Below are positions 2,179 through 23,509 of a DNA stretch of 28,105 nt, one piece after another. Position numbers and translations under genes: made by a program. Source of the DNA: Octopus sinensis (taxonomy: Eukaryota); NCBI RefSeq assembly GCF_006345805.1, contig NW_021827503.1:1-28105 (forward strand), read 5' to 3'. The notes beneath the pieces were generated by a model. The model was not told the DNA's origin, searched no databases, and saw nothing but the letters and a program-made list of their open reading frames with translations. Numbering within the stretch: the stretch's first letter is position 1; each line of letters starts with the position of its first letter.

Positions 2179-2222
2179 GTAACCCTCTGTTCCTTTCGTT
2201 TGTGTTTTAATTCACTAGGATT

Positions 2223-2490: not shown

Positions 2491-4942
2491 GCACGGACTG
2501 AAGAAACCACCTGAACCAAGAGTACCATTTGATTTGAGCGACATCAAACGGAAAGAAATGGATGAATTCATAAGGAAAGCAAGAGCAAAAAGTGCACCAG
2601 GGAACGATGGAGTGAGCTACAAGGTATACAAATATTGCCCAAAATTACGTTTGCAGCTGTTTGCACTGATAAGAGAAATGTGGAAGAAGAAAGATGTAGC
2701 GGAGCGATGGTGTATAGCCGAAGGTATCTATCTACCTAAAGAAAAAGAGGCAAAAGCACTAGGCCAATTTAGACCGATTTCACTACTAAATACAGACGGG
2801 AAAATCATGTTTGGAATAATTGCTAGACGAATTATAAGATTCGTACAGCATAACGGATACGTTAATGAAGCGATTCAAAAAGCAGGAATCCCTGGGTGCA
2901 TAGAACACGCATTTTCCATCTGGGAAGCCATCACCTGTGCAAAACAAAAGAAGACAAACCTGTATATTGTTTGGCTAGATCTTGCCAATGCCTATGGATC
3001 TGTTCCGCACGCAATAATAAAAACAGCGATGGACGTCTTTTGGATTCCAAAAGATGTTCAACGAATGCTCATGTCGTACTACGACAACCTGAGGATGAAA
3101 TTTACAGCAGGTAAGTTCACAACGGAGTGGCAACGGCTTTAAATAGGTATTGCAGCCGGATGCACGATATCAGTCATCTTATTCGTGCTAGTCATGGAAA
3201 TGCTACTCAGATCTACAAACTGTGAGAAAGCTGTTACAAAGACACCATTAAGGGCTTTTATGGACGATGTAACTATATTATCGGAAAGTAGAGAAGCAGC
3301 AGAGGGAACGTTAGAGCGGTTGGACGAACTGATAGGATGGGCAAGGATGAAATTCAAAGCCAAAAAATCTCGAAGCGTGGCTTTCGTGAAAGGAAGGCAA
3401 GAAGAAGTGAAATTTAGGATAGGAAGTGAAGACATACCAACGGTGAAAGAACAACCAGTAAAGAGTCTCGGCAGATGGTATAGAGATTTATTAAATGATA
3501 AGAAGCAAGGGAAAGAAACGCACGAGTTAGTAGAACAAGGATTAAAGGCAATTGACAGAACAACGCTGCTGGGAAAATTCAAATGTTAGATACTGCAATT
3601 TGGGCTATACCCAAGAATTATGTGGTCATTGCAAATGTACGAAATAGCCTCGAGTATAGTAGAAAAGATGGAGCAAAGATGCAGTGTGTTTATCAGAAAA
3701 TGGCTTGGTCTGCCGAAACCACTGAATACAACTGCACTATATGGAAAACCCGTGCTGCAACTACCAATAACATCAATCGCCGAAGAATATAAGGCAGGAA
3801 AGGCAAGGACAGTAATGATGCTAAGGTACTCAAAAGATCAGAGCATCCAGGAAAACCCTCCAAAGGTACGAACAGGGAGGAAATGGAAGGCGGAAGAGGC
3901 AGTAAACAGGGCGATCAGAAAATTAAGGCACGCAGATATAGTCGGAGCGACGCAAGAAGCTAGAACCGGCCTAGCATCGCAAAACTTCAGGCCATTTTGC
4001 AAGAGAAAAAGAGATGAAAGAGGCAGTGGTATACGAAGTGAGAAAGGAGGAAGAATAAAGGCGAAATGTACATTTGGTGCAATGCAGTCAACAGGGACAG
4101 TGCCTGAGATGGGAGGAATATGTGATCAACCGCAGAATATCAGGGAAGGAACTTTGGGCTTGGGAACAAGCAAGAACATCCTTCCTGATCAAGCCTACCT
4201 TCGACGTTCTACCCTCACCGGCGAACTTAGTCCGGTGGAACATAAAAACAACCGACGAAGGGAGATGCGGAGAGAAAGCGACGGTTAGACATGTTCTGTC
4301 AGGTTGCAGACTAGCAATTGAAAGATATACATGGCGGCATAATCAAGTCCTCGGCGTCATAAGCGCAGCACTCAAGAATAAGATTGAGAGGTACAATAGG
4401 GGAGAATACCCAAAAGTAGAAAGCGCAGGAGAGTATACTTCCACAAAGAGGGAAAAGGTTATAAAACCAGGCCTACAAGTAAAGTATACGAGATAGACGA
4501 AAGATTGAAGGGATACTGGGAGGTGGCCACGGACTTGGAAAGACAAGTAATATTTCCACTAATAAAAACAACAAAAAGATCGGATTTAGTTCTTTGGAAC
4601 AGAGACCGGAGAATGGGAATTTTACTAGAACTGACAGTACCTTGGGAAGAGAACATCGGCAATGCAGAGGAACAAAAGGAGAAGAGGTATGAAAAGCTAA
4701 TCGAAGAATGCAGAGAACAGGGATGGAATGTCGAATATTATCACCTGGCAGTGGGGGCTAGAGGCTTCATTGAAAAAAAAATGACAACGCTTTTCAAAAG
4801 AAGATTTGTTTTTTCTAGCCCCGAGCTGCGTAAACTAATAAGGAGAGTACAGGAGGCGGTCGAAAAAGCCAGCTTCTATATATGGCTGAAGCGGGAAGAC
4901 CGAAAATGGCTTGAAAGTCATAAACATGCCGACGGGAAATAA
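2489..4942 (+). pseudogene. HERO-like RT-RLE polyprotein, interrupted by stops and frameshifts
   Basis: Consecutive ORFs 2489-3142, 3185-3589, 3620-4288, 4074-4496 and 4505-4942 join into one RT-CCHC-RLE reading. Confidence 0.85.
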
Positions 4943-5248
4943 CATCATTAGGTGAGACCAGCTGACTGACAGGTGACGGTCGTTTAGAAAAAGTGCGGGC
5001 TAAAACTACGCGCCTTCACTAGTTAGTTAAGGTGAGACAGTGTCACGTGACAACTTGCTGGGACTACCTGTCAGGTGACGGTCGTTTAGAAAAAGCGAAG
5101 AGGCCAGGGAACAGAAGAAAGAAGACATGCACCCAACACCAGAGCTGAAGACACCTCCGAAAGAAGGGTGGGGGCGCCACGTCAAAACGGTAGAGAAGTA
5201 GGGGCCGAAACCGGACGTGGTTCCTCCTGATGATGTCTTGAGCTAACT
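2491..5248 (+). mobile_element. 5'-truncated R2-group (HERO-like) non-LTR retrotransposon: RT, CCHC finger and restriction-like endonuclease
   Basis: KARAKSAPGNDGVSYKVYKYCP, QFRPISLLN, WLDLANAYGSVPH, GIAAGCTISVILF, FMDD (3257-3268), CGEKATVRHVLSGC...RYTWRHNQVL and RLE motif RSDLVLW...LELTVPWE...K..RY. The 3' boundary is approximate. Confidence 0.85.
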
Positions 5249-5570
5249 GGATCCTATAAAGGAGCTGTTGTGGTAGCAGACCACGAAACACGGTTGTAAT
5301 TCCTCTTTTAGTATGACACTATTGCCCAAGGTCCCCGGGGTCTTTTCCATAGGCTTTTCTATCCACGGACAAACATAATCTGTTTTCCCCTTTTACATTG
5401 ACATTTCTGTGATACACGATCTCTATTGATTGGCCTCACTTTTTTTTCATGATCCCTTTTGATCGGAATTCACCCTCCCCTTTTTTCCCCTTCACTTCTT
5501 CCCAAAAAGAAAAGCCCTACTTTGTATTTTGTCCCTTCTGTGTACAGCCCCGTGTGGCCAATCTATCTAT

Positions 5571-5571
<1 letters not shown>

Positions 5572-5634
<63 letters not shown>
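5572..5634 (+). repeat. (CTAT)n microsatellite at the 3' end of element A
   Basis: Direct reading. Confidence 0.95.
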
Positions 5635-5764: not shown

Positions 5765-5913
5765 GGAAAATATTAGTTATCGCCATACTAATATGGCATT
5801 CTTATAAAAATAAGAAAAAAGCTGACCGCTTATTAGCTCCATGAGGCCATCGCCTTAAGTTAGCTATTTGATACACAATCTGTATCCATATATTCCAGTT
5901 AAATTTACAATTT
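5765..5913 (-). repeat. Inverted 149-bp copy of 9727-9875 (start of the hammerhead-bearing repeat array, without the ribozyme)
   Basis: The reverse complement matches AAATTGTAAATTTAACTGGAATATATGGATACAG...CTAATATTTTCC with no mismatch seen by eye. Confidence 0.95.
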
Positions 5914-6806
5914 GGGTCAGTTTCAAACTTATTTCCATTTCCATTTTCTTCGATTTCCTTGCCATATTTCTAAACAAATATGGCTCAGCGGAATGATGAG
6001 GCCGACTTCCTGCCTCTACCAATACTAGAGGTGAAGGAAGCTGAAAGTAAAGCCGTTGCATGTGAACACACACAGGCCTTAGAAATCAGGAATGCTTCTG
6101 CTACTACAATCACTGGCTCTACCACTGCTACCACCACTACCAACATGGATACCGGAAACAATTTTGCCGCAGCTTTAAAGCTAAAGAAAACAATCATGTG
6201 CTTTTCCAAAGATGAACTGTTTGCCTGTAAAGCAATGTTAAAAATGATGACCTCAGCATACAACTACAAACACCACAAGACATCACGGAAAAAATCGAAA
6301 AAATTTGCCACGATCAAAGTTTGATTCGATAGTGAAGAAAGAGCCAAGGACCTCTCCACAAAGTCCTTCCAATTTGAAAATTTATTGATGATTCCCAACA
6401 TACCTTGGCCGTAGGGTCAAAAAAATTAAAATAAAGAATGTGCATCCTGAAATAGAAATAAAGTAGCTCATGTCCGCCATTTGCTATGATATCGAGGACA
6501 AAATCCATATTTTGGAAATCGCTGTCATGGACCAGCAAAACTGGATTGGCCAAGAAATCAAAGTTCTTGCTCAGATTAATTCAATGATTTACGAAAAAAT
6601 TCCACATCGAATCCAATTGAGAGAGGATTCAAGTTTACATGTGGCCATCAAAGGCAGAAAGCCTTGTTGCTACATTTGTGATAGCAACACACACTTACAA
6701 AATACGTGCCCAACAACAGCAACAACAAGATCATGAAAAACAACAACAACCACAAGAAAACCAAAAACTGGGCAAAAAACCAGCACTACTACCCTCACCG
6801 CCATAT
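5914..6806 (+). mobile_element. Tx1-like element B, 5' portion only (5' UTR and ORF1)
   Basis: Initiator-like TCAGTT at 5917-5922 and ATG at 5980. ORF1 reads NFAAALKLKK...KFATIKV.FDSEERAK...PTYLGRRVKKIKIKNVHPE...QQNWIGQEI...KGRKPC-CYICDSNTHLQNTC (6668-6709). Cut off by the RTE element. Confidence 0.85.
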
Positions 6807-8673
6807 GCACAACTAATTAGGGAGAGAGTCAGTTTAGATGAGATGCAGTTTGGGTTCATGCCAGGGAGAAGCACCACTGATGCTATATTTCTGGTAAGAC
6901 AGCTGCAGGAGAAATAGCCAAAGATAAGCCTCTGTACCTGGCTTTTGTTGACATGGAGAAAGCCTTTGATAGGGTCCCCCAATCCCTTATCTAGTGGTCA
7001 ATGAGAAAACTAGGGATAGATGAATGGTTAGTGAGAGCTGAGCAAGCCATGTACAAGGATGCTTTCAGTAAGGTGAGGGTTGGCAACGAGTACAGTGAAG
7101 AATTCCAGGTAGAGGTAGGGGTCCACCAAGGTTCAGTCCTCAGCCCCCTCCTATTTATCATAGTGCTCCAGGCAATAACAGGAATTCAAGATAGGATCCC
7201 CTGAGAGCTCCCATATGCTGATGACCTTGCTCTAATTGCTGAGTCACTATCAGAACTGGAGGAGAGGTTTCAGGTGTGGAAACAAGGATTAGAATCGAAG
7301 GGCCTTAGAGTCAACCTAGCTAAAACCAAAGTCCTAATAAGTAGGAAGGCAGGCAAACCACAAGTCCCTTCAGGTAGATGGCCCTGCTCAATCTATAGAA
7401 AAGGCATAGGTAGAAACTCTATAAAATGTACCCAGTGTAAGCTATGGACACATAAGAAGTGCAGCGATATCAAAGGAAGGTTAACTGGGAAGATAGTTTT
7501 TGTGTGTGGCAGATGCTCAGGAGCAATAAATAACACTGAAAATGTGCAGAGAACAACTTCCGCCACATTCCAGGGAGAAAAACTAGAAGCAGTTAATAGC
7601 TTCCGTTACCTAGGTGACCAAGTCAGTAGCAAGGGAGGGTGCGCTGAAAGTGTAGCTGCTAGAATAAGAATAGCCTGGGCAAAGTTCAGAGAGCTCTTAC
7701 CTCTGCTGGTGACAAAAGGCCTCTCGCTCAGAGTAAAAGGTAGACTGTATGATGCATGTGTACGAACAGCCATGCTACATTGCAGTGAAACATGGGCTGT
7801 GACTGCTGAGGACATGCATAAGCTCGCAAGGAATGAAGCCAGTATGCTCCGATGGATGTGTAATGTCAGTGTGCATACTCGACAGAGTGTAAGTACCTTG
7901 AGAGAAAAGTTGGACCTTAGAAGCATCAGATGTGGTGTGCAAGAGGGACGAATGTGCTGGTATGGCGAGAATGGATGGGGATAGCTGTGTGAAAAAGTGC
8001 CACACCCTAGCGGTTGAGGGAAACTGTGGAAGAAGTAGACCCTGGAAGGCCTGAGATGAAGTGGTGAAGCATGACCCTCGAACATTAGGCCTCACCAAGG
8101 CAATGACTAGTGATCGAGACTTTTGGAAATATGCTGTACTTGAGAAGACATGGCAAGCCAAGTGAGACCATAACATCGTGGCCTATGCCACGGGTGTAAC
8201 CAGCCCACTTATGTGTACCTTTCCTTCATTGGACACTAAACTCTGTTGAGGCAAGTGAAATCGAAATCAAATTTGATGACTGGCATCTGTGCTAGTAGAG
8301 TGCTAAGAGCACCATCCAAGCATGATCGTTGCCAGCATTGCCTTACTGGCACTTGTGCTGGTGGCATGTGAAAAAACATTCGAGTGAGGTCGTTGCCAGT
8401 GCCACTGGACTGGCTCCTGTGTAGGTGGCTCGTAAAAAACACCATTTGAGCGTGGCCGTTGCCAGTACCGCCTGACTGGACCTTGTGCCAGTGGCACATA
8501 AAAGCACCCACTACACTCTTGGTGAGGTTGGCGTTAGGAAGGGCATCCAGCTGTAGAAACTCTGCCAGATCAAAATTGGAGCCTGGTGCAGCCGTCTGGT
8601 TCGCCAGTCTCAGTCAAATTGTCCAACCCATGCTAGCATGGAAAGCAGACGTTAAACGATGATGATGATGATG
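6807..8673 (+). mobile_element. 5'-truncated RTE-clade LINE (RT C-terminal part, 3' UTR, (GAT)n tail)
   Basis: DEMQFGFMPGRSTTDAIF, AFVDMEKAFDRVP, GVHQGSVLSPLLF, YADD (7214-7225), FRYLG, stop at 8163-8165. The 3' UTR ends ...GGAAAGCAGACGTTAAACGATGATGATG. No TSD found. Confidence 0.9.
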
Positions 8674-9256
8674 ATATATATAAGTAATGTTTATCGCCAC
8701 TTCAACATGGCTGTTCTGTAGGAACCAACATTACTACTGCTTTTAACTTCTTCGTGGACACTTCTTCCAGTTGATTATTGATGAAATCTACACCTGATAT
8801 ATATTTCAAGCAGGGGAGTGTACCCCACCCCATCTCCTAGTGATGATAAGACCACCAGACTGTCTGGTTTTGAGCTATTTCTGCTCATCCTCAGTGGTAG
8901 ACACCCATCCACTAGAGATAGCAGTAGTTTGTTCCACCTCACAATATGTAGAAAAATCAGTGACCGGTTGTCACATATATATTGCAAGCTTCCCTGTTTG
9001 CAGTATGCATTGGGTGCAGATTGCATCAATAACCAGCTGGAGTAGGTGTTCTCCTGGGTTTAAAAATGGTAATAATGTCATTACAAGGTTGACAAGGTGG
9101 CAAAAGTAACAAGAATTTTGGGAGAAAAAGTATAAATAAAAAATGAGTAGAAATCGAACTGGTGGGTGTACAATATGACTCTCCCCAGACACTATAAAAT
9201 TTGCTTTAAGACATGAATTCACATAAAGAATCTTGCAAACTACATACCAAAACGAA

Positions 9257-9260
<4 letters not shown>

Positions 9261-9298
<38 letters not shown>
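9261..9298. repeat. (TA)n microsatellite
   Basis: Direct reading. Confidence 0.95.
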
Positions 9299-9304
<6 letters not shown>

Positions 9305-10022
9305 TAAGGGCATTACTATACATAAATGCCTCATACTAGGAGGGACTCTTAAAGTCAAAACTACCATAATAAACACATTTTACCGAACGTGTGGGAATGT
9401 AACTCTCGAAGCAAGCCTTTTAAAAACAGATTCAGTTGCAGATCATATGATTTCATAATTAGTTCATAAAATGCACTTTTTAATCGTCATGCATGCATAA
9501 TCAAGACACATAAAAAGGAACAAAAAACCAACATACCAGACGAACATCAAATGTATCCAGCATAGTACATAGAATTGTTCACACTTGAATGTCTATGTAA
9601 GAGGTGAGCTTTTCCAATTGCATCTCGGTACAGGTGTTTATTCAGAATAAAATTCAGCACTGAATATATTCCGGTTTTTCATACTAACTACTTGATAATT
9701 TCTTATAAAGATTTTATCCTATTTTTAAATTGTAAATTTAACTGGAATATATGGATACAGATTGTGTATCAAATAGCTAACTTAAGGCGATGGCCTCATG
9801 GAGCTAATAAGCGGTCAGCTTTTTTCTTATTTTTATAAGAATGCCATATTAGTATGGCGATAACTAATATTTTCCGGGAAGGCTGCCGTTGTTCTCTTTT
9901 ACAGAGACTTAGTAATTTTAATATTTCTATTATTGAAAACAAGTGGATGTATTCCACCGAAGCTAGGTAAATAAAACCTTTGAACAGAGATTGTCGGAAG
10001 CGACACCTACTGGTTTGGCTAC

Positions 10023-10064
10023 GCTGCATTGAAAAGGGGCAATACCCCGAAACGCGTCTGTAGC
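10023..10064 (+). ncRNA. Type I hammerhead ribozyme, U3-A8 core variant, predicted cleavage after GUC at 10058
   Basis: Helix I GCTGCA/TGTAGC (6 bp, one G-U), core TTGAAAA (10029-10035), helix II GGGG-CAATA-CCCC, GAAA, helix III ACGCGT palindrome (10052-10057), C17 at 10058. Confidence 0.8.
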
Positions 10065-10355
10065 TGCCGGCCAAGTAGTGTGGAGCGACTGACCTCCCTT
10101 GTTCAAAGGTTATATGGATACAGATTGTGTATCAAATAGCTACTTAAGGCGATGGCCTCATGGAGCTAATAAGCGGTCAGCTTTTTCTTTTTTTATAAGA
10201 ATGCCATATTAGTATGGCGATAACTAATATTTTCCGGGAACGCTGCCGTTGTTCTCTTTTAGAGAGACTTAGTAATTTTAATATTTCTATTATTGAAAAC
10301 AAGTGGATGTATTCCACCGAAGCTAGGTAAATAAAACCTTTGAACAGAGATTGTC

Positions 10356-10372
10356 GGAAGCGACACCTACTG
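10356..10372 (+). repeat. Left target-site duplication GGAAGCGACACCTACTG (17 bp)
   Basis: Identical to 15694-15710. A single uninterrupted copy occurs in unit 1 at 9996-10012. Confidence 0.95.
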
Positions 10373-10591
10373 ATTTTCCTTGGATTACGTCGGATTATTT
10401 ACGCTGTAAGCTGTTTTATGTTAGTTCGTTCTGTTCTGGATTTACACGTACAATTTTTGGAGTATTAACTTGTGAAACAAAGTAATTTCGTCGCCCTTCG
10501 GGGTAGAAAATTTCTTTTTATATATGAACTTTAATTCAGTGTGGATTTAATTTTTATCTTGTCTCTTGTGACAAGTCACTTGCATTTTATT

Positions 10592-12057
10592 ATGGATCTT
10601 GACTTAACGTCAAATTTTGATTTCCCGAGATGGGAGAAGTTATAAAGCAAAAGGATACAAAGGAGAAACAAAGTTTTTCGGAAGCGTTGGAGGCAATGTT
10701 TATAAACTGGAAGTAACAATGGAGGATCTCTTCAAGTTCAGAAAGTTCATACAAAGGAATGGAGAAGAAACGAGAATAATACCGCCCCCTGACACCTTAC
10801 AAGCAATCCGTGAGAAGACGGTAATTTATAAGTATATAATATTAAGGAAAAAAGATTGCAGATGTAAGAAATGAATTGGTAGAACGGTGCATGGCACCAA
10901 TTTGGAACAAGGTTCGCTATGTTGGCCGAGGAGTGAGAAGCGCTACTATTGAAGCGCATTTCGAGTCGGCTAGCATAGCGAAGGAAATTTTCAACTCAAA
11001 CGTTGAAGAGTGCAGACATCCTGTTGCTGCCCACGTACTTAGGGCGCAGAACAGCTAAGATAACAATAGAGGATATACCAACAGGTTACGATGTAATGTG
11101 GGCAGCAACAGCGGTCGTATTCGACGTAGAGAGAAATTAAACATTTTAAACATGAGGATGAAAGAGGCAAAATTTTGGAAAGGTCAGCAGCTTGAAATGA
11201 TCGTTCAAGCTGACAATGCAACGCTGGAGAGTTTGCCAGACAGGGTCTTCGTGGGGGATGGACACACTGCGCGGGTATCGGTGGAGGGACGTAGGCCCAG
11301 ATGTTTCAAATGTGGGCAGAAGGGTCACGTCCGCTCAGAGTGCAAAAAAAAAAACCCGTTAATGCCCCCATTCAAACCGCTGTGGAGAACAAAGCAGACA
11401 TCACAGCAACAACAAAAGAGAATACCCGGAAAAAGCAAAATGAAAGTCAAAAGAGGAAAAGAAAATGAATGGAAAACAAAGCGAAAAACGAAAACGAGGT
11501 GGAAAATATTTTATCAAATGGAAAAGAACTGGAAGTAATGGAATATACAACTGTAACCAACAAAAGGAAAAATCCAATACCCCGGACTCCCCACCCCAAA
11601 CAAAAAGAAACAAACGCAGAACACCACAAAAAATTATCCAATCCCACCCCGCTGGCACTACTTTGTAGGCCAGCATTTCATTAAACCCAGCCCCCCCACT
11701 TTAAAAGGATTCAAAAAAACCGATAGGTGCATTGCTTATAACACAAAACAAGAGAGTAGTTTGGTACATAAGGCGAAACCAAACATAAAATGTTTCAATC
11801 ATCGGAAAAAACCCGGATTGGAGGTATGCGAAGGTTTGGAGAGGAGGAATGGAAGGAGAGACTTCCAACTACACGTGAGGGACAACCTGATTAAAGATGT
11901 CACACAAGAGGTGATAGCTGGAAAATTGAATATTAGCCCGGCAGCCACTCCATCCCAGAGCCCGGGGCAACGCCGGTTAAATGCCCAGCAACAACGGAGA
12001 ATGTGGGGAAAGCAGGCAACCAAAAGCTGCCATGCTCCCTCTCACAACCGTAAGTAA
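10592..12057 (+). pseudogene. LINE C ORF1 (frameshifted in this sequence)
   Basis: ATG at 10592, then TLQAIREKTVIYK...VRSATIEAHFES...VSVEGRRPR-CFKCGQKGHVRSEC (11302-11343). The end frame is uncertain. Confidence 0.85.
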
Positions 12058-15000
12058 CAAACTTTCTTCTTCATTCATCGATATTAAGTTGGGCTGTATA
12101 AATGTGCGTGGAATGGGGTCGAAATGGAAACAGGCTTGCTTGCTGGACGACCTCAGGACACACAGAATAGATGTAGCCATTGTCACCCGAGTCCAAGATG
12201 AGAGGAACCCAAGCGTTCTCGCATCTTCTCAATGGTTACGAGAAATTTATTTCTCCTAGCCGAGGAGGAAGTGCAGGCGTGGCAGTCCTTATCAGAAGAA
12301 CTTGGACTTACATGTAAGTACTGTCTTTAGGACCCAGAAGTAGGCTGGTTGTCCTCGATGTAACTCACGTAAGTAAGCAGTCCTTCAGGTTGGTAGCTGT
12401 TTATGCTCCTAATGAGGGTAGGCAGACTGGTTTTTATCGGAACTTGGAGCACTTTCTAGTGACGTCTAAAACGGTAGTATTGGTAGGGGATTTCAACACT
12501 ATCATCGATGCGCGGATAGATAGTGTGGGCTCGTCTGATAGAAGGGGGAATCCTTGCCTTAAGGTTCTACTGACGAGCTTTAATCTAGTAGATCGGTTTT
12601 TCGAATGGATGAGCCGAGCATTCCACAGTGGACGTGAGTAACAATGACGGCTCACGCAGATCGTATATAGATAGGGTATTTGTTAAGAACGAGATAGGAA
12701 TAGCATTAGCTGTCCACAATTTTGTATTGTGCCTTACCACGGATCACAAATTAGTGACGTGTGAGGTACATGTAGATAATGCCATAGACAGGGACCCGAT
12801 ACTGGAAAATGAACAAGTCTATTTTGGCTTGTGAAGCTTTCCGTAACCGGATTATGGAATTAGTCCGAGGGCATTATGTGGAACCATCATTAATAATAGA
12901 TGGTGGATCGCCCTCAAAAGAGCCATCCGTTTGGAGTCCATTAGATTTAGCAACCAGCTAAGTTTAGATAGGACTAGAATAGAGGGCGATTTAGTTAAGA
13001 ACTTAGACGAGCAATGGATCTGGCTGTGCATCTAGAGTGTTTAGCAGAGAGAGAACGATCTTGTACCGTCACCTCAATGCCAAGCATGAAGGATGTAGAG
13101 TCAGAGCTAAGCTACGTGCAGTGAAACGAGAAGGTATTAATGTTGCCGGATGGGCACGTCGTGTGGAGAGTCAGAAGGGCAAAAAGTCCTCTATTAAGTC
13201 TTTAACTGACGAACAGGGACGCAAAATCTATGGACAGGAGGAGATACAGAAGGTCTTTCAACAGCATTTCGCTCGGTTGTTTGGGAGGGCGATCCACTCG
13301 AGCGAGGGAGACTTACAGAACTTCCTAGCTGGGGGCCTCGGCTCTCGCCAAGCAGAGCGGAACGCTGTGAAGGACCGATTACTCCCGCGGAGGTAAGAGG
13401 GTTTTGGCTGAATGCGCGCCGGGGGGAAAAGTCGCCGGGACTGGATGGTCTGCCCTATGAGTTTTTATTGTTGTATGCCGGACTTGTTCGGGGACATACT
13501 GGCAAGCCTACGCAAACTGGCAACAGAATGGGAGGATTCCCAGTTCTGTGACCGGGGAGTTGTGACGCTGATCCAGAAAGACCCGAGCAAGGGGATAATA
13601 TTAGTAATTATAGGCCCATAACTCTACTTAATGTAGAGTTAAAGATTTTGGCCAAGGTGTTAGCAAAAGGTTGAAGGTCGTCATGGAAAAACTTGTCGGA
13701 AAGGCACAGACATGTGCAATCCCAGGCAGGTCGATCGAAGATAATCTTCACCTTCTACGCTACACTATAGACAGGGTTGGGCAATTAGCCGGCAAAGGAG
13801 GGGCATTGGTCCCATTTAGACCAAAGTAAAGCATTTGATAGGTAGATCATCAGTACCTGGCGACGGTTCTCGAAGCGGCTGGGCTAGGTCCCTGACTTTC
13901 GCGGGTGGATATCAGCTATGTACAGCGGTATCAAAGTCCACAGTCCAGATAAACGGTTACTTAACGGAACCGTTTTCGATTAAGCGTTCAGTTCGTCAAG
14001 GATGTCCCTTGTCCCCTCTCCTGTACGTTTTGGCTCTTGAGCCATTGCTGCGGAAGTTGGAGACGGTGAGATGCAATCCTAATGAAATCGGATGCAGTAA
14101 GTCTGTTTCTGCGTATGCGGATGACGTCACCTTCATCGTGTCCAACGAAGCACAACTAACTCGTGTAGAAGGTGCTCTCCGAAAATACGAAGCGGTGGCT
14201 GGGGCAAAAGTTAACAAGGACAAGTCCACTGGTTTGCGCCTCGGCACCTGGGAGGAACAGCCGATATCGTCCAGTGTTGTTGGACACTGGACAGATGGTC
14301 CTGTTTAAATTGCTTGGAGTTTGGTTGTGGTTTCAGACTCCCAGACGGAGGAAAATTGGAGCGAGGTAGTGACCAAGGTAGAAGCCATAGTTTTGGAGTG
14401 GTCCGGAGGCATCTTTCCTTGAAAGGGAGGCGGAGGTGGTACAGGTTTTTATAGCATCTGTAATCACCTATCGCCGACTGTCGTGCCTTGCCCCCGATTT
14501 GTGGCTAAGCAAGTTTGATCGACTCCTTTTCCGCTTTTTTGTGGAAGGGAGGAAAGCCACTGTAAGGCGCTCCGTGTGTTGCCAGGAACCACTAAAGTGT
14601 TGCTGGGGATGCCTTGGTTAATGATGCGCAGCATGCGCTGAGACTGAGACATCTCTGGTTTCACCTGGAAGGTGATAAGGGTGGAGTCCGCTGGCAGATA
14701 ATTCTTCCCCGCAACCGGACTCTATGGAGAGATTTAAACCCGGTTTCATTAAAAGACGGAACCTGACTTTATGGCAGAAAGAGTGCCGACAGGCACTCTG
14801 GCTGATCCACAAGATAGGCAAAGCCGGCTGCGGGAATACCACCTCGACATTTTTAGAAGGATGGTAGAGGCAAAAAATGACGACGTCCTAAGAGGGGCTC
14901 TGGGGTTCGATGAGGATCAACTATCCGACCTGTTTAAGAAGACTTTCAAGCCGGGGTATTTGGACAATTACCAAAATCCCTGACTTGGCAGTGCTATGGA

Positions 15001-15439
15001 TGCTCTACCTGTTCGCGATAAGTTATATAGGCATGGAATGTCAGTGCCACCGACATGTCCAAGATGTGGGTTGGACGATGAAACCGTCCAGCACGTTTGT
15101 ACATTGTCAGGAACTGTCAGGCTTAATAAGTTACGTAGAATACGTGTTGTCGCATGGGACGAGTACAGCTATCGGCTGGTTCTATAATAAATGATACCGC
15201 CAGCTGGACTCTCAAAGGAAGGTGAGGCTTGTTTTCACTGTACGGTGGCAGTACTGAAAGAGTGTGTGTGGAGAACTAGATTGGAAGGTTTGGTGTCAGG
15301 AACCTTTGTCTCTGGATATGGTATGTTAAAATACTTCAGATACCATCTAAAGAGCAAGATGGATTTAGAGAAGAGGAACCTGACACAGAAAAAGTATGTG
15401 AATCGATGGAAGGATGTGATAAAAAGGTGGTGTGAGTAA
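12032..15439 (+). pseudogene. LINE C ORF2 (APE endonuclease and reverse transcriptase), frameshifted in this sequence
   Basis: IKLGCINVRG, VAVYAPN, VGDFN, SYIDRVFV, TDHKLV (APE); RSVRQGCPLSPLLYVLALEPLL, YADD (14114-14125) (RT); CPRCGLDDETVQH; ends VIKRWCE-stop. Confidence 0.9.
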
Positions 15440-15693
15440 CCCTGCTTGGTCATCATGAAGGGAGAAAATAGTCTCTGGGCTCTTAGGCTGTCGGGTAAGA
15501 ATCCTGACTGTGATATACCTAGCTGGCCAAATCATTTTAATTTAAAAAAAAAAAGGAGAAAAGTAAAGTAAAGTAAATCATATCAATATCAACATATGTA
15601 AATATCAAACGAACAACGTAAACTTTTTGTAATTATGTTTTGTATTGTAATGTACTATCTCTGTAAGATTTTTATAATCATAATAAAGATTTA

Positions 15694-15993
15694 GGAAGCG
15701 ACACCTACTGGTTTGGCTACGCTGCATTGAAAAGGGGCAATACCCCGAAACGCGTCTGTAGCTGCCGGCCAAGTAGTGTGGAGCGACTGACCTCCCTTGT
15801 TCAAAGGTTATATGGATACAGTTTGTGTATCAAATAGCTAACTTAAGGCGATGGCCTCATGGAGCTAATAAGCGGTCAGCTTTTTTCTTATTTTTATAAG
15901 AATGCCATATTAGTATGGCGATAACTAATATTTTCCGGGAACGCTGCCGTTGTTCTCTTTTAGAGAGACTTAGTAATTTTAATATTCTATTAT
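15694..15993 (+). repeat. Hammerhead-bearing tandem repeat, right part (right TSD 15694-15710, rest of unit 2, truncated unit 3 from 15809)
   Basis: 15694-15808 is identical by eye to 9996-10110. Unit 3 runs into a (TA)n tract. Confidence 0.95.
15721..15762 (+). ncRNA. Type I hammerhead ribozyme, second copy, predicted cleavage after 15756
   Basis: Identical to 10023-10064. Confidence 0.8.
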
Positions 15994-15994
15994 G

Positions 15995-16025
<31 letters not shown>

Positions 16026-16042
16026 TATATATATATACATAT

Positions 16043-16093
<51 letters not shown>

Positions 16094-16128
16094 ATATATA
16101 TACACACATATATATTATATATATATAA

Positions 16129-16177
<49 letters not shown>

Positions 16178-16208
16178 TATATATATATATTATATATATA
16201 TAATATAA
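15994..16208. repeat. Imperfect (TA)n microsatellite
   Basis: Direct reading. Confidence 0.95.
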
Positions 16209-16394
16209 TGAGTGTTAAATAAGTCTGTGTGGAAAGAGGTTGTTCTCTCCTAGGGATATTTATCCAAGCGTACACCAGTTTAGAACTATATCAATTAACG
16301 ATACTGAAAATCCAACGTGTGTATATGTACTGGTGTTTATCGTTGGTTCTTCTTCGATATTAGTACAGTTGTTACTATAGATGTTTCCATCTTT

Positions 16395-16640
16395 TCGACG
16401 CTCCAATTAGATCAGACTCGAACCTGGACAGGCCACGACGGTGGGGCAGTAGTAGATGACGGGTGCGATGTACGCATTCACCACCTCTTCCCGACCTTTC
16501 GGGGATAGCTTTTTCTCGGCCCATTTCTGGGTAAAATTCGCCACCCTGCTCATCACCTCATCCCAGTTCTATATCTGGAGATTTTGATCGAAACAGACCC
16601 CAAGCAATTTAACCGGTCCTTCCGTCTACTGGAGATCCCG
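16395..16640 (-). pseudogene. Fragment of another Tx1-like ORF2 (region just after the RT core)
   Basis: The minus strand reads TEGPVKLLGVCFDQ...NWDEVMSRV...WAEKKLSPKGREEVVNAYIAPVIYY, homologous to LINE C 14290-14480 (TDGPV.KLLGVW...NWSEVVTKV...LSLKGRAEVVQVFIASVI). Confidence 0.8.
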
Positions 16641-17139
16641 ATTTGTTCGACTAAACACTTCAGGACAACTAAAAGCAAGTAAAAGAATAAAAGAGATTTG
16701 TTCAACGCCAGTTCTTCCCACAGTTGACGTTGCAAATTATCTTTAGCAACGTTATGCCCCACGTCGGAGATTAACACCTTACTAACATTTGTTGAGGCAA
16801 CCTGTTCTCTTTCAACAGATACGTGGTATTATCGTTGCTTTCGGTCGTATTGTAAGGGGTTTAAGAACTTTAGGGGTTAGTGTCTGGGATTCAGTGTTTA
16901 GGGATCGATTCTTCTTGAACAATAGATGTTCAGACGATATGTCTTGCGTTTGGATAGTAACTGCACGATTTTCGAAATCTGCTAGGATTCCAAGTTTTGT
17001 TACATTTCCTGTCGATATTGGCATCGTTCTAAGATTTCCGAGGAAAAAGAGCCAAACATAACCTTACTGATGGTATGCAAAATAGATTCTGCTGTAAGCA
17101 TTCTGTTGAGATATATTCTCTTCTACATTGATACATTTA

Positions 17140-17590
17140 TATATACATACGTACATACATACATACATACATACATACATACACATAAATACCCCCATGC
17201 ATACGCACATGCTTTTATGTACACATACATATAGACATAGTTATATATAAATATACATGTATATATGCATATATTTATAAACGCACGCATATATATGTAT
17301 GCAAGTCCTGTATATAGATATATGTATATGCATATGGATATATATAGATATGTTTATATGTGTAATATATATATATATATATAATATATATAATATATAT
17401 ATGTTTATGTGCATTATTATATATATAATATATATATGCATTTATATATATATACATATATATATATACATATATTATATATAATACATACACACACGCA
17501 CGCACACACACACATATACATATACACACACACACACATATTGTATATATATTATATATATATATATATATGCACATACATACATACATG
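17140..17590. repeat. Compound (TA)/(CA)/(TACA) microsatellite
   Basis: Direct reading. Confidence 0.9.
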
Positions 17591-17902
17591 CACACAATTA
17601 CCACGCGTCTGGAAATGGAAAAACACGCTAAGCAGGCTCGCAGAGACAGACTCGGTTAAATTTTCCCAACTACCTTACCAGAGCAGGACTCCGCATATAG
17701 CAGACCTTCATATAAAAACTAGAAAATGAATGCCATTAACAGGTCTAAGTCTTTGGCTCTGCTCGTGCCAAAATTCCTGGCATATGCATCGTATGAATTC
17801 CTCCCACAGCTGCTCATAACTGCCGCTGAAGCACAGCAAGCGCTGGTAAAAACTGAGATGATTTTTCTTTTGTTTCTGCCCTGCCAAATTAATAACATAC
17901 AT

Positions 17903-17903
17903 A

Positions 17904-17995
<92 letters not shown>

Positions 17996-18032
17996 CATAC
18001 ATATATATGCATATATATGTACATATATATAC

Positions 18033-18079
<47 letters not shown>

Positions 18080-18094
18080 ACACACATACATACA

Positions 18095-18126
<32 letters not shown>
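17903..18126. repeat. Compound (TA)/(CA)/(TACA) microsatellite
   Basis: Direct reading. Confidence 0.9.
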
Positions 18127-18127
<1 letters not shown>

Positions 18128-18420
18128 GTTTGTTTTTCACTGTCCTGTTTGTGTTACCTATTTTGACCCTTCGAAAAATACCAAATTTTATCTAATTTGC
18201 TTTGCTGGACTAACTGTTTTATCGAAAGCGTACGTGGTTTTTAAATGCTCGAAATACGAGACTAGAAAAACAGCCAACAACCGATGAAGGGTCGTTCTTT
18301 ATGTTGTTTGTCTTGTTTTCCATTTGTGTCTTTCGTTGTTCTAAATAATAGTTCATGTTCCATGTACTCGTACTTCGTACTTTTTTTTGTACACGTTTCA
18401 CGACGTCCTGTGCCCACATA

Positions 18421-18465
<45 letters not shown>

Positions 18466-19083
18466 CAATTACAACGGCGCCTGCAACCACCACCACCACC
18501 ACCACCACCACCAAAAACAACAGCACAAACAAAAAAGTAGATCATTTTATATCTCACCTTGAAGGTTATCTCCATGAAATCCATTGAAGAAGAAATCTTC
18601 ACCATGAACGAAAGATATTTAAAAAATCCCACTTAAGTTGTGCAAAATCAAAACATTAACCATTTGAGTGCAAACTGCGAGAAAATGTCTTCGTTTTATT
18701 ACATCTCCGTAGTGAAAGGTTGACAGAGTCTTGAGTACTGATTGTGAGAAAGTGTCCTCAAGGTATTACTTCTCCGCGATGCATGATTTACACGGCCTTC
18801 AGTACCAATTGTGAGAAAATTACCTCAAGATATTACTTCTCCATGATTTAGAGTTGACAGAGTCATCTGAAATGAAATAAGAAATAGGGATAGAAATAAC
18901 TAATATGAATATTCTTTTACTGGTTTATCAAACGAATGTGAATGTCCTTGACTCCTTTTAGAGGCCATAAGAGCTGTTGGATAGGAGATATGGATGTGGC
19001 CTAAAGCCGGAGACCCCATCGAAATGCTTGCAACAGATTGGACGCTGCTGAAAGCACCAGGTTGTGGTGCTAAAATGGGCTTC

Positions 19084-19178
19084 CAGATAGTTTCCGTCTA
19101 CCAAGAAATTACTTAGTCAGGGATACACCAGAAGACGCTCATGGTTCTGCGCAGTGGAAGTGAACTTCTAAACCACAG
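19084..19178 (-). mobile_element. Highly decayed, internally deleted tRNA-derived SINE remnant
   Basis: TTCCGTCTACCAA...GCGCAGTGG...GAACTTCTAAACCACAG resembles pieces of a common cephalopod SINE (recollection only). Confidence 0.3.
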
Positions 19179-19259
19179 TTATGTATGCCTGTGTATGTAT
19201 AAAAGAGTTTATGGACCTCACTCACAAAAACAGGAAATATTGTTTCAATTATCTTTACA

Positions 19260-19800
19260 GCGAACACGGTTCTTCACCCAAAGCCAAATCTTTCGCGAAA
19301 ATACCTTTTTCTTCAAATCTACGAATCTTTCATAAAAATTCTATAAAAATTAATACCTTTTCCACAACCCAAACTTTACAGTCTTGTAATTTCATTTACC
19401 CGAATCCTTGCTCACTGGAACGAATAATTCTTTTCAAAAGAACTTATTTAATTCGCTACAGTGAAAACTAGCACAGTTTCTAAATCATATATTGGATTAA
19501 CTTCAGATTCTTTCAAATTACGTCAGAATCAACATCCGTAGGTTTTTTTTAGCCATCATTTTTTGGAAGCGCCGGCACTATGTCTAAATACATTTGTAAT
19601 CTTATGTCTAATAACACAAATTTTGACGCCAAACCTTATCATTCAAACAAACGGTGTCTACTTTGCCTGTCTGAAGCATATAAAATATTTTTTTCCAACC
19701 CCACCCTTTTGAATCGACATTCAGAACTGGTGTCTCCTTGCCTGCATAAACACTTTATATCGCTCGAATATTATAAACCATTTCTCCGACATAAGAGTTG
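19260..19800 (+). pseudogene. Decayed Penelope-like element, GIY-YIG endonuclease region
   Basis: RIFHKNSIKI..STT, SYIGLT (YIG at 19488-19496) and MSKYICNL...AKPYHSNKRCLLCLSE...PTLLNRHSELVSPCLHK match the PLE endonuclease C-terminal pattern (LSKYIW...KPY...RCxLCLxE...LLNxRSEL..CxH). Confidence 0.8.
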
Positions 19801-20192
19801 AACTCAAGTCAATGAGAGTCACTCATCTTCCCAATCAATCTCTCCTCGGAAAATGACGTTCTATCCACGGACGTTTTACCATAGGAAGACCACGCTTTAT
19901 TTAACTGCTTCCTTTCAACTCAACCGCTTTCCAAATATTTAAACCAACCGAATTAAACTTTAAATACGAAATCGCAATAAATTACCCTCTGTTGAATGCA
20001 GCATCGATTCCCAGTTTAAATCCTTCTTTCTGTCCATTTCTAATTTATCAATTTCTAACTTATTTCTTTGCTACTCTGCTCTGCAATCCTTTACAGTATC
20101 ACAGACGCAATATATTTTTCAAAAATTTACTTAACACAATTCGGAAGATCAAAGCAATGTTATTGAAATCCAAAATTTTTAATTTCACTTAA

Positions 20193-20217
20193 TACATACA
20201 TATGTGTATATATATAT

Positions 20218-20279
<62 letters not shown>

Positions 20280-20405
20280 CACACTTACATACATTTATAA
20301 TATATATATATATATATGTGTGTGAATATTATGTATATATATATATGAAAAAATATATATGCATATCCATATATATATATGCATATACATATATATATAA
20401 ATATA

Positions 20406-20439
<34 letters not shown>

Positions 20440-20544
20440 CATATATATATATGTATATATAATAACACATATACTTAAAATATGCTTGTATACATGCACA
20501 TCCGCACACTCACACGCACACATGCACGCATACATACAGATATG

Positions 20545-20587
<43 letters not shown>

Positions 20588-21035
20588 TCATACACGCATA
20601 TGCATACACTCATAAACTCACATACATACAGATATACATACATGCATACACACATACATATATACATATACAAACATAATACGTACACATATATACATAC
20701 ATACATACCTATATAACTTCCTACTTGATGTTTAATTTCCAATGTAAGTGCCTTGTTTCTTAGAAAAGAAAACACAGAAGGATACGTACACACACATGCA
20801 CACATACATACATACATACATACACACTCACACATATACATACATACATACATACATACATACACACGCATACATACATACATACACACGCATACATACA
20901 TACATGCATACATACATACATACATACAAACACTCGTGACTAATTATAGAATACTGTTGTCATTAAATCTTACATACATAAATATATACACTCCTGAGTA
21001 ATTATAGAACAGTGTTGCTATTAAATCGTATATAC
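20193..21035. repeat. Long compound (TA)/(CA)/(TACA) microsatellite
   Basis: Direct reading. Confidence 0.9.
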
Positions 21036-21131
21036 ATCAACGAAATCTCTTATTAAGAAGGAGTTTGGAGTCCTAAGCTTTTAATTAGCCATCTTTAAGG
21101 TGGGTAATGGTTTGAGAGAAAAATATTTAGT

Positions 21132-21203
21132 CAGTGGTGGTGGTGGCGGTGGTGGTAGTGGTGGTGGTGGTGGTGTGGATAGCAGTGTTTGACATTAAAA
21201 TGG

Positions 21204-21235
<32 letters not shown>

Positions 21236-21501
21236 ATGGTGGTGGCTGTGGTCGTGGTGGTGGTGTGGATAGCAGTGTTTGACTTTAAAATGGTTGTGGT
21301 GATGATGGTGGTGGTGGTGGTGGTGGTGGTAGTGGTGGTGGTGGCGGCGACGGCGGTGGTGGAGTTCGTGGCAATAGTGTTTGACTTCAAAATGGTAAAG
21401 GTGATTGTGATGATGGCGATGATGATGATGATGAAGACAATAATGGGTGGTGGTGGTCGTCGTGGCAATGATGTTTGAATTTAAAATAGTGATGGTGATT
21501 G

Positions 21502-21532
<31 letters not shown>

Positions 21533-22125
21533 GGTGATGATGGTGATTGATGATGGTGGTGGTGGTGGTGATAAAGACGGCACATGACGGGGTTTTTGAA
21601 AAGATAATTGTTAAGGTGAGTGGTGCTGTGATAGTGATGGTGGCGACGGCAATGGTTGTAATGGTAGTTATGATGGTGATGGTGGTGGTGGTGGCGGCGG
21701 CGATGATGGTGGGAATAGTTGTTATGATGATGATGATGATGATGGAACTAGTAATGGTTGCAGCGAGGATGGTGGTTCTGGCGCTTGGTGTTCATAGGCA
21801 GTTGAGGTGATGGTTGTGTTTTTGGTGCTGGATTGGTGGCGATGGTGGCAGTGGTGGGTGGTATTGGTGATGTTGGTGTTGCTGTTGGTGGTGGTCTTGA
21901 CGGCTGTGATGATGGTGGAGGTGGCGGCGGTGGTGATGATCATGATGATCATGATCATGATGACGACGACGATGACGATGATGATGGTGGGGGATGACGA
22001 CGGCGATGACAAAGATGGTGATGATGACGATGATGACAATGACGATGATGATGATGACCACCACCACCGCCGCCGCCACCACCACAACAACGATGATGGT
22101 GATAACGATGACGATGATGATGAAT
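21132..22125. repeat. (GGT)/(GAT)/(GAC) trinucleotide low-complexity tract with an embedded 4-unit minisatellite
   Basis: Direct reading. The conserved core GTGTTTGAC.T.AAAATGG occurs at 21185, 21275 and 21377, with a more diverged copy at 21471. Confidence 0.9.
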
Positions 22126-22267
22126 GTCTAACCTTCAAGTCAGCTCTCTGTGGTCGGGCAGAAACCTATGATGAAAGACATTCCAGTCGTAGCCAACCCG
22201 TCTCATATTTTTTTCTTTTGTGCAGGGAAGTCGGAAATACATTATCCTAGTGTTATTTCCTAAAACG

Positions 22268-22570
22268 GTGTGTGAGTGTGTGTGTGAGTGTGTGTGAGTG
22301 TGTGTGTGTGTGAGAGTGAGTGTGAGTGTGTGTGTGTGAGTGTGTGTGTGTGAGTGTGTGTGTGTGTGAGTGTGTGTGTGTGTGTGACTAAGTGAGTGTG
22401 TGTGTGTGTGTGAGTGTGTGTGTGAGAGTGAGTGTGTGTGTGAGAGTGAGTGTGAGTGTGTGTGTGTGTGAGTGAGTGTGTGTGTGTGTGTGTGTGTGTG
22501 AGTGTGTGTATATGTGTGTGTGTGACTGAGTGTGTGTGACTGAGTGTGTGTGACTGAGTGTGTGTGTGTG
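22268..22570. repeat. (GT)n/(GTGA) microsatellite
   Basis: Direct reading. Confidence 0.95.
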
Positions 22571-23069
22571 TTATTTAAAGGAGCTTTGACTGCTATTTCT
22601 AGTAACTCAACAGGCGACATCGTGAGAGACAAAGGTCCCTTTTTGATGTCAAGCAATGACGACAGTAGCCATGGCGATGGAATAGCAATACAGGAGCTGT
22701 CGTCGTGGTTAAAAAGTGCCGTTGTTGTTGTTGCCGTCGCCGACGGTGCTGATGGCGGTGGGGATGATGATGGTGGTGGTGGCGGCGGTGATGATTGTAG
22801 GATGGAAATACAGCAAAAAAGTTAAAGTGTAATGTATGTAGCGGAGGAGGAGAAGAGGCAGGGGAGGCAGGGGAAAGCGTAGTACGGAGGAAAAAAGGGT
22901 GAAGACAAGTAAAGGATTGAGAGAGGGAGCGAGGGGAGGAGTGAGAGAGGGAGCAAGGGTAAGGGAGTGAAGGTGGGAGGTAATAAAGAAGGCATTCAGT
23001 TACGCCACATAATATGATGGATGGTTAAGTTGTCTGTTAATTAGGTGTGAAGTCAGGCTCTTGTTGATA

Positions 23070-23362
23070 TGTGTGGATGTGTGTGGGTATGTGTGTGTGT
23101 GCGCGCGTGCACACGTGTGTTACCGTGTGTGTGTGTGTGTGTAATATATGTGTATGTATGAATGTATATCTATCTGTCTATCTATCTGTCTATCTATCTG
23201 TCTGTCTATCTATCTATTTATCTATCTACCTATCTATCTATATTTATAGATATATGTATATATATATGGGTTTATGTGTGTGTATATATCTATATATGTA
23301 TCCACACACAGATACATGCTTACACAAGCTTACATATATAAAGATGTATGTGTGTGTGTATC

Positions 23363-23403
<41 letters not shown>

Positions 23404-23459: not shown

Positions 23460-23509
<50 letters not shown>

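What the first reader, a model, noticed from the sequence alone, without database searches (positions are those of the whole stretch)
9727..15993. Full-length Tx1-like LINE inserted into a hammerhead-ribozyme tandem repeat and bracketed by two identical ribozymes
Seen: a 5321-bp LINE (10373-15693) with a perfect 17-bp TSD (GGAAGCGACACCTACTG) interrupts unit 2 of a ~360-bp tandem repeat. Identical hammerhead motifs lie upstream (cut after 10058) and downstream (cut after 15756). Established: Tx1-clade APE elements are often sequence-specific for multicopy targets (U2 snRNA, 5S rRNA, tRNA arrays, microsatellites), and R2-type elements use ribozymes to release themselves from host co-transcripts. 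Inference: this may be a Tx1 family that targets retrozyme or Penelope-terminal repeats. Read-through transcription would then be cut on both sides into a 5698-nt RNA (314 nt of repeat, the LINE, 63 nt of repeat) with 5'-OH and 2',3'-cyclic phosphate ends, which could in principle circularise. I do not know of a LINE described with a ribozyme repeat as its target.
Basis: partly seen in the sequence, partly recalled or inferred. Interest (0 to 1): 0.92.

Follow-up and report, generated by a model that had tools for sequence, protein, structure and literature searches.

The report
Dead LINE nested in ribozyme repeat
A decayed L1/Tx1-type jumping gene sits inside one unit of a 360-bp hammerhead-ribozyme tandem repeat (a "retrozyme"), probably in an octopod genome. 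This looks like an ordinary nested insertion, and one copy cannot show that the element aims at ribozyme repeats.

Summary
The sequence observations hold. A 360/361-bp tandem repeat (9749-15993) is interrupted in unit 2 by a 5321-bp non-LTR retrotransposon (10373-15693). A perfect 17-bp target-site duplication flanks it (10356-10372 and 15694-15710).

The repeat looks like a non-LTR retrozyme:
- Each complete unit has a type I hammerhead with a 6-bp helix I and a 4-bp helix II.
- Helix III is a palindrome (ACGCGU) that can form only in a dimer.
- The core carries U3-A8 in place of C3-G8.
- The 360-nt monomer is strongly self-paired (z = -6.7).
- Rfam does not call the hammerhead, and cleavage is untested.

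The insert has an ORF1 zinc knuckle, an APE endonuclease, an RT and a zf-RVT domain. Its nearest solved structure is human L1 ORF2p. It is dead, with at least 10 frameshifts and 5 stop codons.

The claim that the element targets ribozyme repeats rests on this single copy. No other family member was reachable. The nearest retrievable relatives (35-40% aa identity) lie at unrelated sites, and the window is rich in transposons. Bracketing by two hammerheads follows automatically from any insertion into a repeat unit.

Best reading: a chance nested insertion. Interest is low to moderate. The retrozyme, with its U3-A8 hammerhead, is a new member of a known kind.

The parts
9749..10109 (+). Retrozyme unit 1 (361 bp), complete, with an unoccupied copy of the 17-mer target at 9996-10012
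   Evidence: tandem period 360/361 bp, 41% GC
10023..10064 (+). Hammerhead 1, type I. Helix I is 10023-10028 paired with 10059-10064. The core UUGAAAA is 10029-10035. Helix II is GGGG/CCCC at 10036-10048. GAAA is 10049-10052. The palindrome ACGCGU is 10052-10057. The predicted cut is after C10058.
   Evidence: The architecture and the U3-A8 covariation match PMC4209133. Not called by Rfam.
10110..10372 (+). Retrozyme unit 2, 5' part, ending in the left copy of the target-site duplication (10356-10372)
10373..15693 (+). L1/Tx1-type LINE, 5321 bp, structurally complete but decayed. It ends in ...AATAAAGATTTA with no poly(A) or microsatellite tail.
11059..11535 (+). ORF1 remnant with a CCHC zinc knuckle
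   Evidence: zf-CCHC, E 1.8e-5
12086..12792 (+). APE endonuclease domain, spread over three reading frames with one in-frame stop
   Evidence: Exo_endo_phos, E 1.4e-9
13550..14366 (+). Reverse transcriptase domain (YADD at about 14130), spread over three frames
   Evidence: RVT_1, E 1.9e-13; human L1 ORF2p, E 4e-27
14984..15184 (+). C-terminal zinc-binding zf-RVT motif. ORF2 ends at the stop codon at 15437-15439.
   Evidence: zf-RVT, E 8e-6
15694..15807 (+). Retrozyme unit 2, 3' part, beginning with the right copy of the target-site duplication (15694-15710)
15721..15762 (+). Hammerhead 2, identical to hammerhead 1. The predicted cut is after C15756.
15808..15993 (+). Retrozyme unit 3, truncated at unit position ~185 by (TA)n (15991-16207). 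It has no hammerhead.
5765..5913 (-). Inverted 149-bp copy, 100% identical to the left edge of the array (22 bp of flank plus the first ~127 bp of a unit)

Best explanation
A short array of a non-LTR retrozyme was hit once by an L1/Tx1-type LINE. The retrozyme is a 360-bp unit with a dimer-dependent type I hammerhead, probably mobilised by Penelope-like elements. The LINE entered by ordinary target-primed reverse transcription.

The inferred steps are as follows. The bottom strand was nicked opposite ...GATTGTC^GGAAGCG. The top strand was nicked 17 bp downstream. A full-length copy was then inserted, which produced the 17-bp duplication. The copy, or its donor, later accumulated frameshifts and stops and is now inert.

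Two hammerheads flank the LINE because it landed inside a repeat unit, upstream of that unit's ribozyme. This is not an adaptation of the LINE.

Shown here: the anatomy, the duplication, the domains, the decay, the hammerhead architecture and the self-paired monomer. Inferred: the order of events, ribozyme activity, and the chance nature of the landing.
For: - The repeat is interrupted and resumes in phase with a perfect 17-bp duplication. A relative has a 15-bp duplication.
- The insert has L1-type domains.
- ORF2 has at least 10 frameshifts and 5 stops.
- The window is rich in transposons. At least three other RT-bearing fragments lie within 17 kb, so nesting is expected.
- Relatives in L001, L003 and L004 sit at three unrelated sites.
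- No part of the LINE resembles the repeat. Rfam finds no ribozyme inside the LINE.
- The repeat matches published retrozyme features. These are 170-400-bp tandem units, GC below 50%, a type I hammerhead with 6-bp helix I and 4-bp helix II, a short palindromic helix III, and a self-paired monomer.
Against: - Many Tx1-clade families are target-specific, some for other transposons.
- This copy is full-length, lies in the same orientation as the ribozymes, leaves the ribozyme intact, and lacks the (TCTA)n tail seen in its Argonauta relatives. These details would also fit a homing element.
- Two diverged Argonauta relatives share a nearly identical 3' flank. This hints that the lineage can have target preferences.
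- No other copy of the family was available, so chance is assumed and not demonstrated.
Confidence: 0.78

Rival explanations
1. The LINE family is sequence-specific for this retrozyme. Its endonuclease, possibly helped by 3' read-through RNA that pairs with the nicked target, inserts at GTC^GGAAGCG in retrozyme units. This would parallel Tx1 in Tx1D, or crocodilian Tx1-Mar in a Mariner element.
For: - Target preference, including for other transposons, is common in the Tx1 clade.
- The copy is full-length with clean junctions and no A-rich or microsatellite tail.
- The LINE's 3' end has no complementarity to the primer strand. Priming would therefore be easier from a read-through RNA carrying GGAAGCG... 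(direct reading of the sequence).
- Two diverged Argonauta relatives share one 3' flank.
Against: - There is only one copy.
- The second target site in the same array (9996-10012) is empty.
- Relatives in another assembly are at three unrelated sites.
- Selection bias applies. A genome with about 10^5 LINE copies should hold some in retrozymes by chance.
Confidence: 0.12
2. The LINE exploits the flanking hammerheads. Read-through transcripts are cut after 10058 and 15756 into a 5698-nt RNA with 5'-OH and 2',3'-cyclic phosphate ends. This RNA serves as, or circularises into, the transposition template.
For: - Both ribozymes are intact, identical and on the LINE's strand.
- Retrozyme RNAs are cut and ligated by a tRNA ligase in other animals.
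- R2 shows that ribozyme release from co-transcripts exists (cited).
Against: - The ribozymes belong to the host repeat and lie 314 nt and 63 nt away from the LINE ends.
- Helix III can form only between two hammerheads, and these are now 5.7 kb apart.
- Minimal or dimeric metazoan hammerheads cleave poorly in vitro.
- This copy is non-coding.
- No transcript data were available.
Confidence: 0.04
3. The whole structure is a Penelope-like element, with the two ribozyme-bearing repeats as its pseudo-LTRs.
For: PLEs carry hammerheads in flanking direct repeats and occur in tandems.
Against: - The internal ORFs are APE plus an L1-type RT plus zf-RVT, not a PLE RT plus GIY-YIG.
- The repeat is interrupted mid-unit with a 17-bp duplication and resumes in phase.
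Confidence: 0.01

Closest known systems
Metazoan non-LTR retrozymes (Cervera & de la Pena 2020, PMC7229834), e.g. the 350-390-bp Mytilus repeats
   Same: Tandem units of about 360 bp at 41% GC. There is one type I hammerhead per unit, and the monomer is highly self-paired. The host is a mollusc.
   Different: The core is U3-A8 instead of C3-G8. Helix III is obligatorily dimeric, as in salamander and PLE hammerheads. No expression or cleavage data exist. The papers searched did not report retrozymes in cephalopods.
Minimal and dimeric hammerheads of Penelope-like elements, including the U3-A8 variant of Schistosoma Cercyon (Cervera & de la Pena 2014, PMC4209133)
   Same: The U3-A8 covariation, and a palindromic helix III that forms only in a dimer.
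   Different: Here helix I (6 bp) and helix II (4 bp) have the canonical metazoan sizes. The motif sits in a short tandem repeat with no PLE ORF nearby.
Target-specific Tx1-clade LINEs: Tx1L in Tx1D, Keno in U2 snRNA genes, Kibi and Koshi in microsatellites, Tx1-Mar in Mariner-N4_AMi (PMC4494074)
   Same: An APE-type L1-superfamily LINE sitting inside a multicopy repeat, with a clean target-site duplication.
   Different: Those families are defined by many copies at one site. Here there is a single copy, and Tx1-clade placement was not tested.
R2 and other LINEs with HDV-like ribozymes
   Same: The idea of releasing element RNA from a host co-transcript by self-cleavage.
   Different: In R2 the ribozyme is encoded at the element's own 5' end. 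Here the hammerheads belong to the host repeat, and no ribozyme was found inside the LINE.

Membership tests
Hammerhead ribozyme, type I | Conserved core CUGANGA ... GAAA ... UH at a three-way junction | tested here: met
   UUGAAAA ... GAAA ... GUC. Positions 3 and 8 changed together to U-A, which keeps the 3-8 pair. This covariation is reported in PMC4209133.
Hammerhead ribozyme, type I | Helices I, II and III | tested here: met
   Helix I is 6 bp and helix II is 4 bp. Helix III is sterically impossible in a monomer. It forms as a 6-bp ACGCGU duplex in the dimer, and cofold gives -34.7 against 2 x -14.3 kcal/mol.
Hammerhead ribozyme, type I | Match to the curated covariance models (Rfam) | tested here: not met
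   No hit at gathering score or at E<=10 on 28 kb, 701 nt or 81 nt.
Hammerhead ribozyme, type I | Self-cleavage, and covariation across homologues | not testable with these tools
   Only two identical copies are available, and no relatives were found.
Non-LTR retrozyme | Tandem 170-400-bp units, each with a type I hammerhead, and low GC | tested here: met
   About 2.5 units of 360/361 bp at 41% GC.
Non-LTR retrozyme | Highly self-paired monomer RNA | tested here: met
   Circular MFE is -118 kcal/mol against -84 +/- 5 for shuffles, z = -6.7, with 67% of bases paired.
Non-LTR retrozyme | Expressed as linear and circular monomer RNA | not testable with these tools
   No transcript data.
L1 superfamily LINE (L1/Tx1) | ORF2 with an N-terminal APE, an RT and a C-terminal Cys motif; an ORF1; a target-site duplication | tested here: met
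   (human L1 ORF2p, E 4e-27), plus the 17-bp duplication.
Tx1 clade | RT phylogeny places it with Tx1 and not with L1 proper | not tested
   No Tx1 reference sequences were on hand, and the database names were uninformative. Octopus repeat annotations list L1-Tx1 as the L1-type superfamily, which is consistent only.
Target-specific LINE | Many independent copies at the same target position | not testable with these tools
   There is one copy, and no family members are in the searchable collections. Relatives at 35% identity are not site-specific.
Penelope-like element | PLE-type RT plus GIY-YIG endonuclease between ribozyme-bearing repeats | tested here: not met
   APE plus L1-type RT.
Ribozyme-processed LINE (R2-like) | A self-cleaving ribozyme encoded within the element's own 5' end | tested here: not met
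   Rfam finds no family inside 10373-15693. The descriptor scan finds hammerheads only in the host repeat.

The most novel reading that the evidence does not exclude
An octopod L1-Tx1 family homes to a hammerhead retrozyme. It is co-transcribed with the repeat. The downstream ribozyme trims its 3' end to a 63-nt tail that pairs with the nicked target in other retrozyme units. The 5' ribozyme cut yields a ligatable, possibly circular, 5.7-kb RNA. This would be a LINE that uses a foreign ribozyme repeat both as a safe harbour and as its RNA-processing machinery.
Probability: 0.05. Interest if true: 0.8.

Novelty: new member of a known kind. Interest (0 to 1): 0.27.

Why it matters
As it stands, the locus documents a retrozyme-type repeat, probably in an octopod, with a natural U3-A8 core in an otherwise canonical type I hammerhead. 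It also shows that retrozyme arrays receive LINE insertions. That is useful for repeat annotation and as a natural test case for the 3-8 pair.

It would matter more if the LINE family proved to home to the ribozyme repeat. That would add a new target class to site-specific LINEs. It would also link LINE RNA processing to a host-repeat ribozyme.

Tried and rejected
- **Rfam.** I searched the whole window at gathering score, then 701 nt and 81 nt at E<=10. None gave a hammerhead hit. I fell back on a hand-written descriptor with shuffle controls.
- **Other copies of the family.**
  - A protein search with a stitched ORF2 gave at best 35-40% identity.
  - Exact scans for the hammerhead 23-mer gave 0 hits in the metagenome and prokaryote-genome collections.
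  - The LINE 3'-end 21-mer gave 23 metagenome hits. All were unrelated AT-rich DNA.
- **Clade naming.** The second protein search and the cluster look-up returned no useful names.
- **LINE and repeat partnership.** BLAST found no similarity between the LINE's ends and the repeat.
- **Penelope-like element.** Rejected on domain content and junctions.
- **RT fragment at 16398-16625(-).** I considered it as a second insertion into the same array. It is only a 230-bp fragment, so nothing can be concluded.
- **5' flanks of the two Argonauta copies.** They were uninformative.
Full report
**What is in the sequence**

The region 9749-15993 is a tandem repeat with a 360/361-bp period.
- Unit 1 is 9749-10109.
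- Unit 2 is 10110-10372 and resumes at 15711-15807.
- Unit 3 is 15808-15993 and is cut off at unit position ~185 by a (TA)n microsatellite (15991-16207).
- Units are about 98% identical.

Unit 2 is interrupted by 5321 bp (10373-15693). GGAAGCGACACCTACTG flanks the insert at 10356-10372 and 15694-15710, matching 17 of 17. Joining the flanks gives an uninterrupted 360-bp unit.

**The repeat is a retrozyme-type element**

Each complete unit carries GCUGCA-UUGAAAA-GGGG-CAAUA-CCCC-GAAA-CGCG-UC^UGUAGC. This reads as a type I hammerhead:
- Helix I is 6 bp and helix II is 4 bp.
- The GAAA and the GUC cleavage triplet are in place.
- Helix III is two pairs around a 2-nt loop.

That monomeric helix III is sterically impossible in the energy model. 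The six bases ACGCGU are a palindrome, however. Cofolding two copies gives the classical double hammerhead with a 6-bp intermolecular helix III. The energy is -34.7 kcal/mol against 2 x -14.3.

The core differs from the consensus at two positions, C3 to U and G8 to A. These two positions pair in the active fold, so the change is compensatory.

Cervera & de la Pena 2014 (PMC4209133) describe the same layout as typical for metazoan type I hammerheads: helix I of 6 bp, helix II of 4 bp, and helix III of 1-2 bp capped by a small palindromic loop that works as a dimer. They also report a natural U3-A8 covariant in Schistosoma Cercyon elements.

A descriptor scan that allows C3-G8 or U3-A8 finds only 10029-10058 and 15727-15756 on both strands of the window. 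It finds nothing in 74 kb of related loci. Three hundred dinucleotide shuffles of the window gave 0.043 loose hits per window and none as good as the real sites.

Against this, Rfam reports no hammerhead at gathering score or at E<=10, even when given only 81 nt. The two copies are identical, so there is no covariation evidence. Activity is untested.

The 360-nt monomer, taken from cut site to cut site, is 41% GC. It folds as a circle at -118 kcal/mol against -84 +/- 5 for shuffles (z = -6.7, 67% paired). Tandem 170-400-bp units, low GC, one type I hammerhead per unit and a highly self-paired monomer define the non-LTR retrozymes. Mussels have units of 350-390 bp (PMC7229834). The papers I could search did not mention retrozymes in cephalopods.

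**The insert is a dead L1/Tx1-type LINE**

- ORF1 keeps a CCHC knuckle (11059-11535; zf-CCHC, E 1.8e-5).
- The stitched N-terminus of ORF2 matches Exo_endo_phos (E 1.4e-9).
- The centre matches RVT_1 (E 1.9e-13).
- The C-terminus matches zf-RVT (E 8e-6).
- The nearest solved structure is human LINE-1 ORF2p across the APE and RT domains (E 4e-27). R2 proteins are far weaker.

Following the coding path needs at least 10 frame changes and crosses at least 5 stop codons. The copy is therefore complete in structure but non-coding.

The best database relatives are only 35-40% identical. One is from the octopod Argonauta hians, and its locus reaches 71% nucleotide identity with the RT core. The window is therefore probably from an octopod.

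Octopus repeat annotations list L1-Tx1 as the L1-type superfamily (PMC13282606 and PMC8967140). "Tx1-like" is thus plausible, but I could not test it by phylogeny.

The element ends in ...AATAAAGATTTA with no poly(A). Its Argonauta relatives end in ...AATAAAGAAA(TCTA)n.

**Is the landing site chosen?**

I could not retrieve another member of the family.
- The protein database holds nothing closer than 40% identity.
- The hammerhead 23-mer is absent from the metagenome and prokaryote collections.
- The 23 metagenome hits to the LINE's last 21 nt are unrelated AT-rich DNA.

The nearest intact relatives come from assembly ERZ21867824. They have a 15-bp duplication at an unrelated site in L001, and two further unrelated 3' flanks in L003 and L004.

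The window is dense in retroelements, so nesting is expected:
- A second decayed LINE lies at 779-5634.
- An RT and PHD fragment lies at 6621-7981.
- An L1-like RT fragment lies at 16398-16625.

The other copy of the 17-mer in the array (9996-10012) is unoccupied.

Some points favour a preference.
- Many Tx1-clade families are target-specific, some for other transposons (PMC4494074).
- This copy is full-length and co-oriented with the ribozymes.
- The primer strand (...GCTTCC-3') has no complementarity to the LINE's 3' end, but it would pair perfectly with a read-through RNA.
- Two Argonauta relatives, only 67-70% identical to each other, are followed by the same ~160-bp sequence at 98.9% identity.

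I put homing at about 0.12.

**Does the LINE use the ribozymes?**

Any insertion into a retrozyme unit is automatically flanked by that unit's ribozyme and by the preceding unit's ribozyme.
- The hammerheads lie 314 nt upstream and 63 nt downstream of the LINE and belong to the repeat.
- No ribozyme was found inside the LINE.
- The hammerhead needs a partner. The insertion moved the only two local copies from 360 nt to 5.7 kb apart, so processing at this locus is more likely impaired than exploited, unless retrozyme RNAs from elsewhere pair in trans.
- Dimeric and minimal metazoan hammerheads cleave weakly in vitro.

The 5698-nt product is arithmetically right and chemically possible, but nothing supports it.

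**Verdict**

The most likely account is an ordinary nested TPRT insertion of a LINE into a retrozyme array, followed by decay.

The modest novelty lies in the retrozyme itself: a probable octopod host, and a U3-A8 core in an otherwise canonical hammerhead. A single genome-wide tabulation of this LINE family's flanks would settle the interesting question.

Noticed in passing
window 5765-5913 (- strand) versus 9727-9875: A 149-bp, 100% identical inverted duplicate of the array's left edge. It includes 22 bp (AAATTGTAAATTTAACTGGAAT) that are not part of the repeat unit. The array's right end runs into (TA)n. Penelope-like elements are described with short terminal 'tail' extensions, inverted truncated copies and a (TA)n bias (PMC8557442). 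This may therefore be a footprint of PLE-mediated retrozyme insertion, or it may be an assembly artefact.
   Followed up: partly
window 779-5634 (+): A second decayed non-LTR retrotransposon. It has an ORF1 with a CCHC-like motif at about 1128-1562 and RVT_1 at 2489-3586. It ends in ...GTGTGGCCAA(TCTA)n at 5561-5634. Its 3' end resembles that of the Argonauta L1-like copies.
   Followed up: partly
window 6621-7981 (+) and 16398-16625 (-): Further RT fragments. The first carries a PHD-like finger. The second is a 230-bp L1-like piece just beyond the (TA)n that truncates the array. The first 17 kb of the window is largely retroelement debris.
   Followed up: partly
L005 (Argonauta hians BAAFZT010000021.1) 7716-10965 and 13174-17074: Two L1-like copies that are only 67-70% identical to each other. 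Both end in ...GGCTAATAAAGAAA(TCTA)n, and each is followed by the same ~160-bp sequence at 98.9% identity. This suggests independent insertions next to one repeated target, or a microsatellite-directed preference.
   Followed up: partly
L002 and L003 (ENA ERZ21867824 contigs): The closest intact relatives form head-to-tail LINE tandems with a 6432-bp period and 99% identity. The junctions read ...AGAAATAAA|GCAGACTAGAAGG with no duplication between copies. The L003 array ends with the first ~14 nt of another unit. A solitary copy in L001 has a normal 15-bp duplication.
   Followed up: partly
window 16000-28105: Very dense simple repeats, including (TA)n, (ACAT)n, (GTG)n/(GAT)n blocks and (GT)n-rich 14-18-bp arrays. 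No convincing coding sequence was seen.
   Followed up: no
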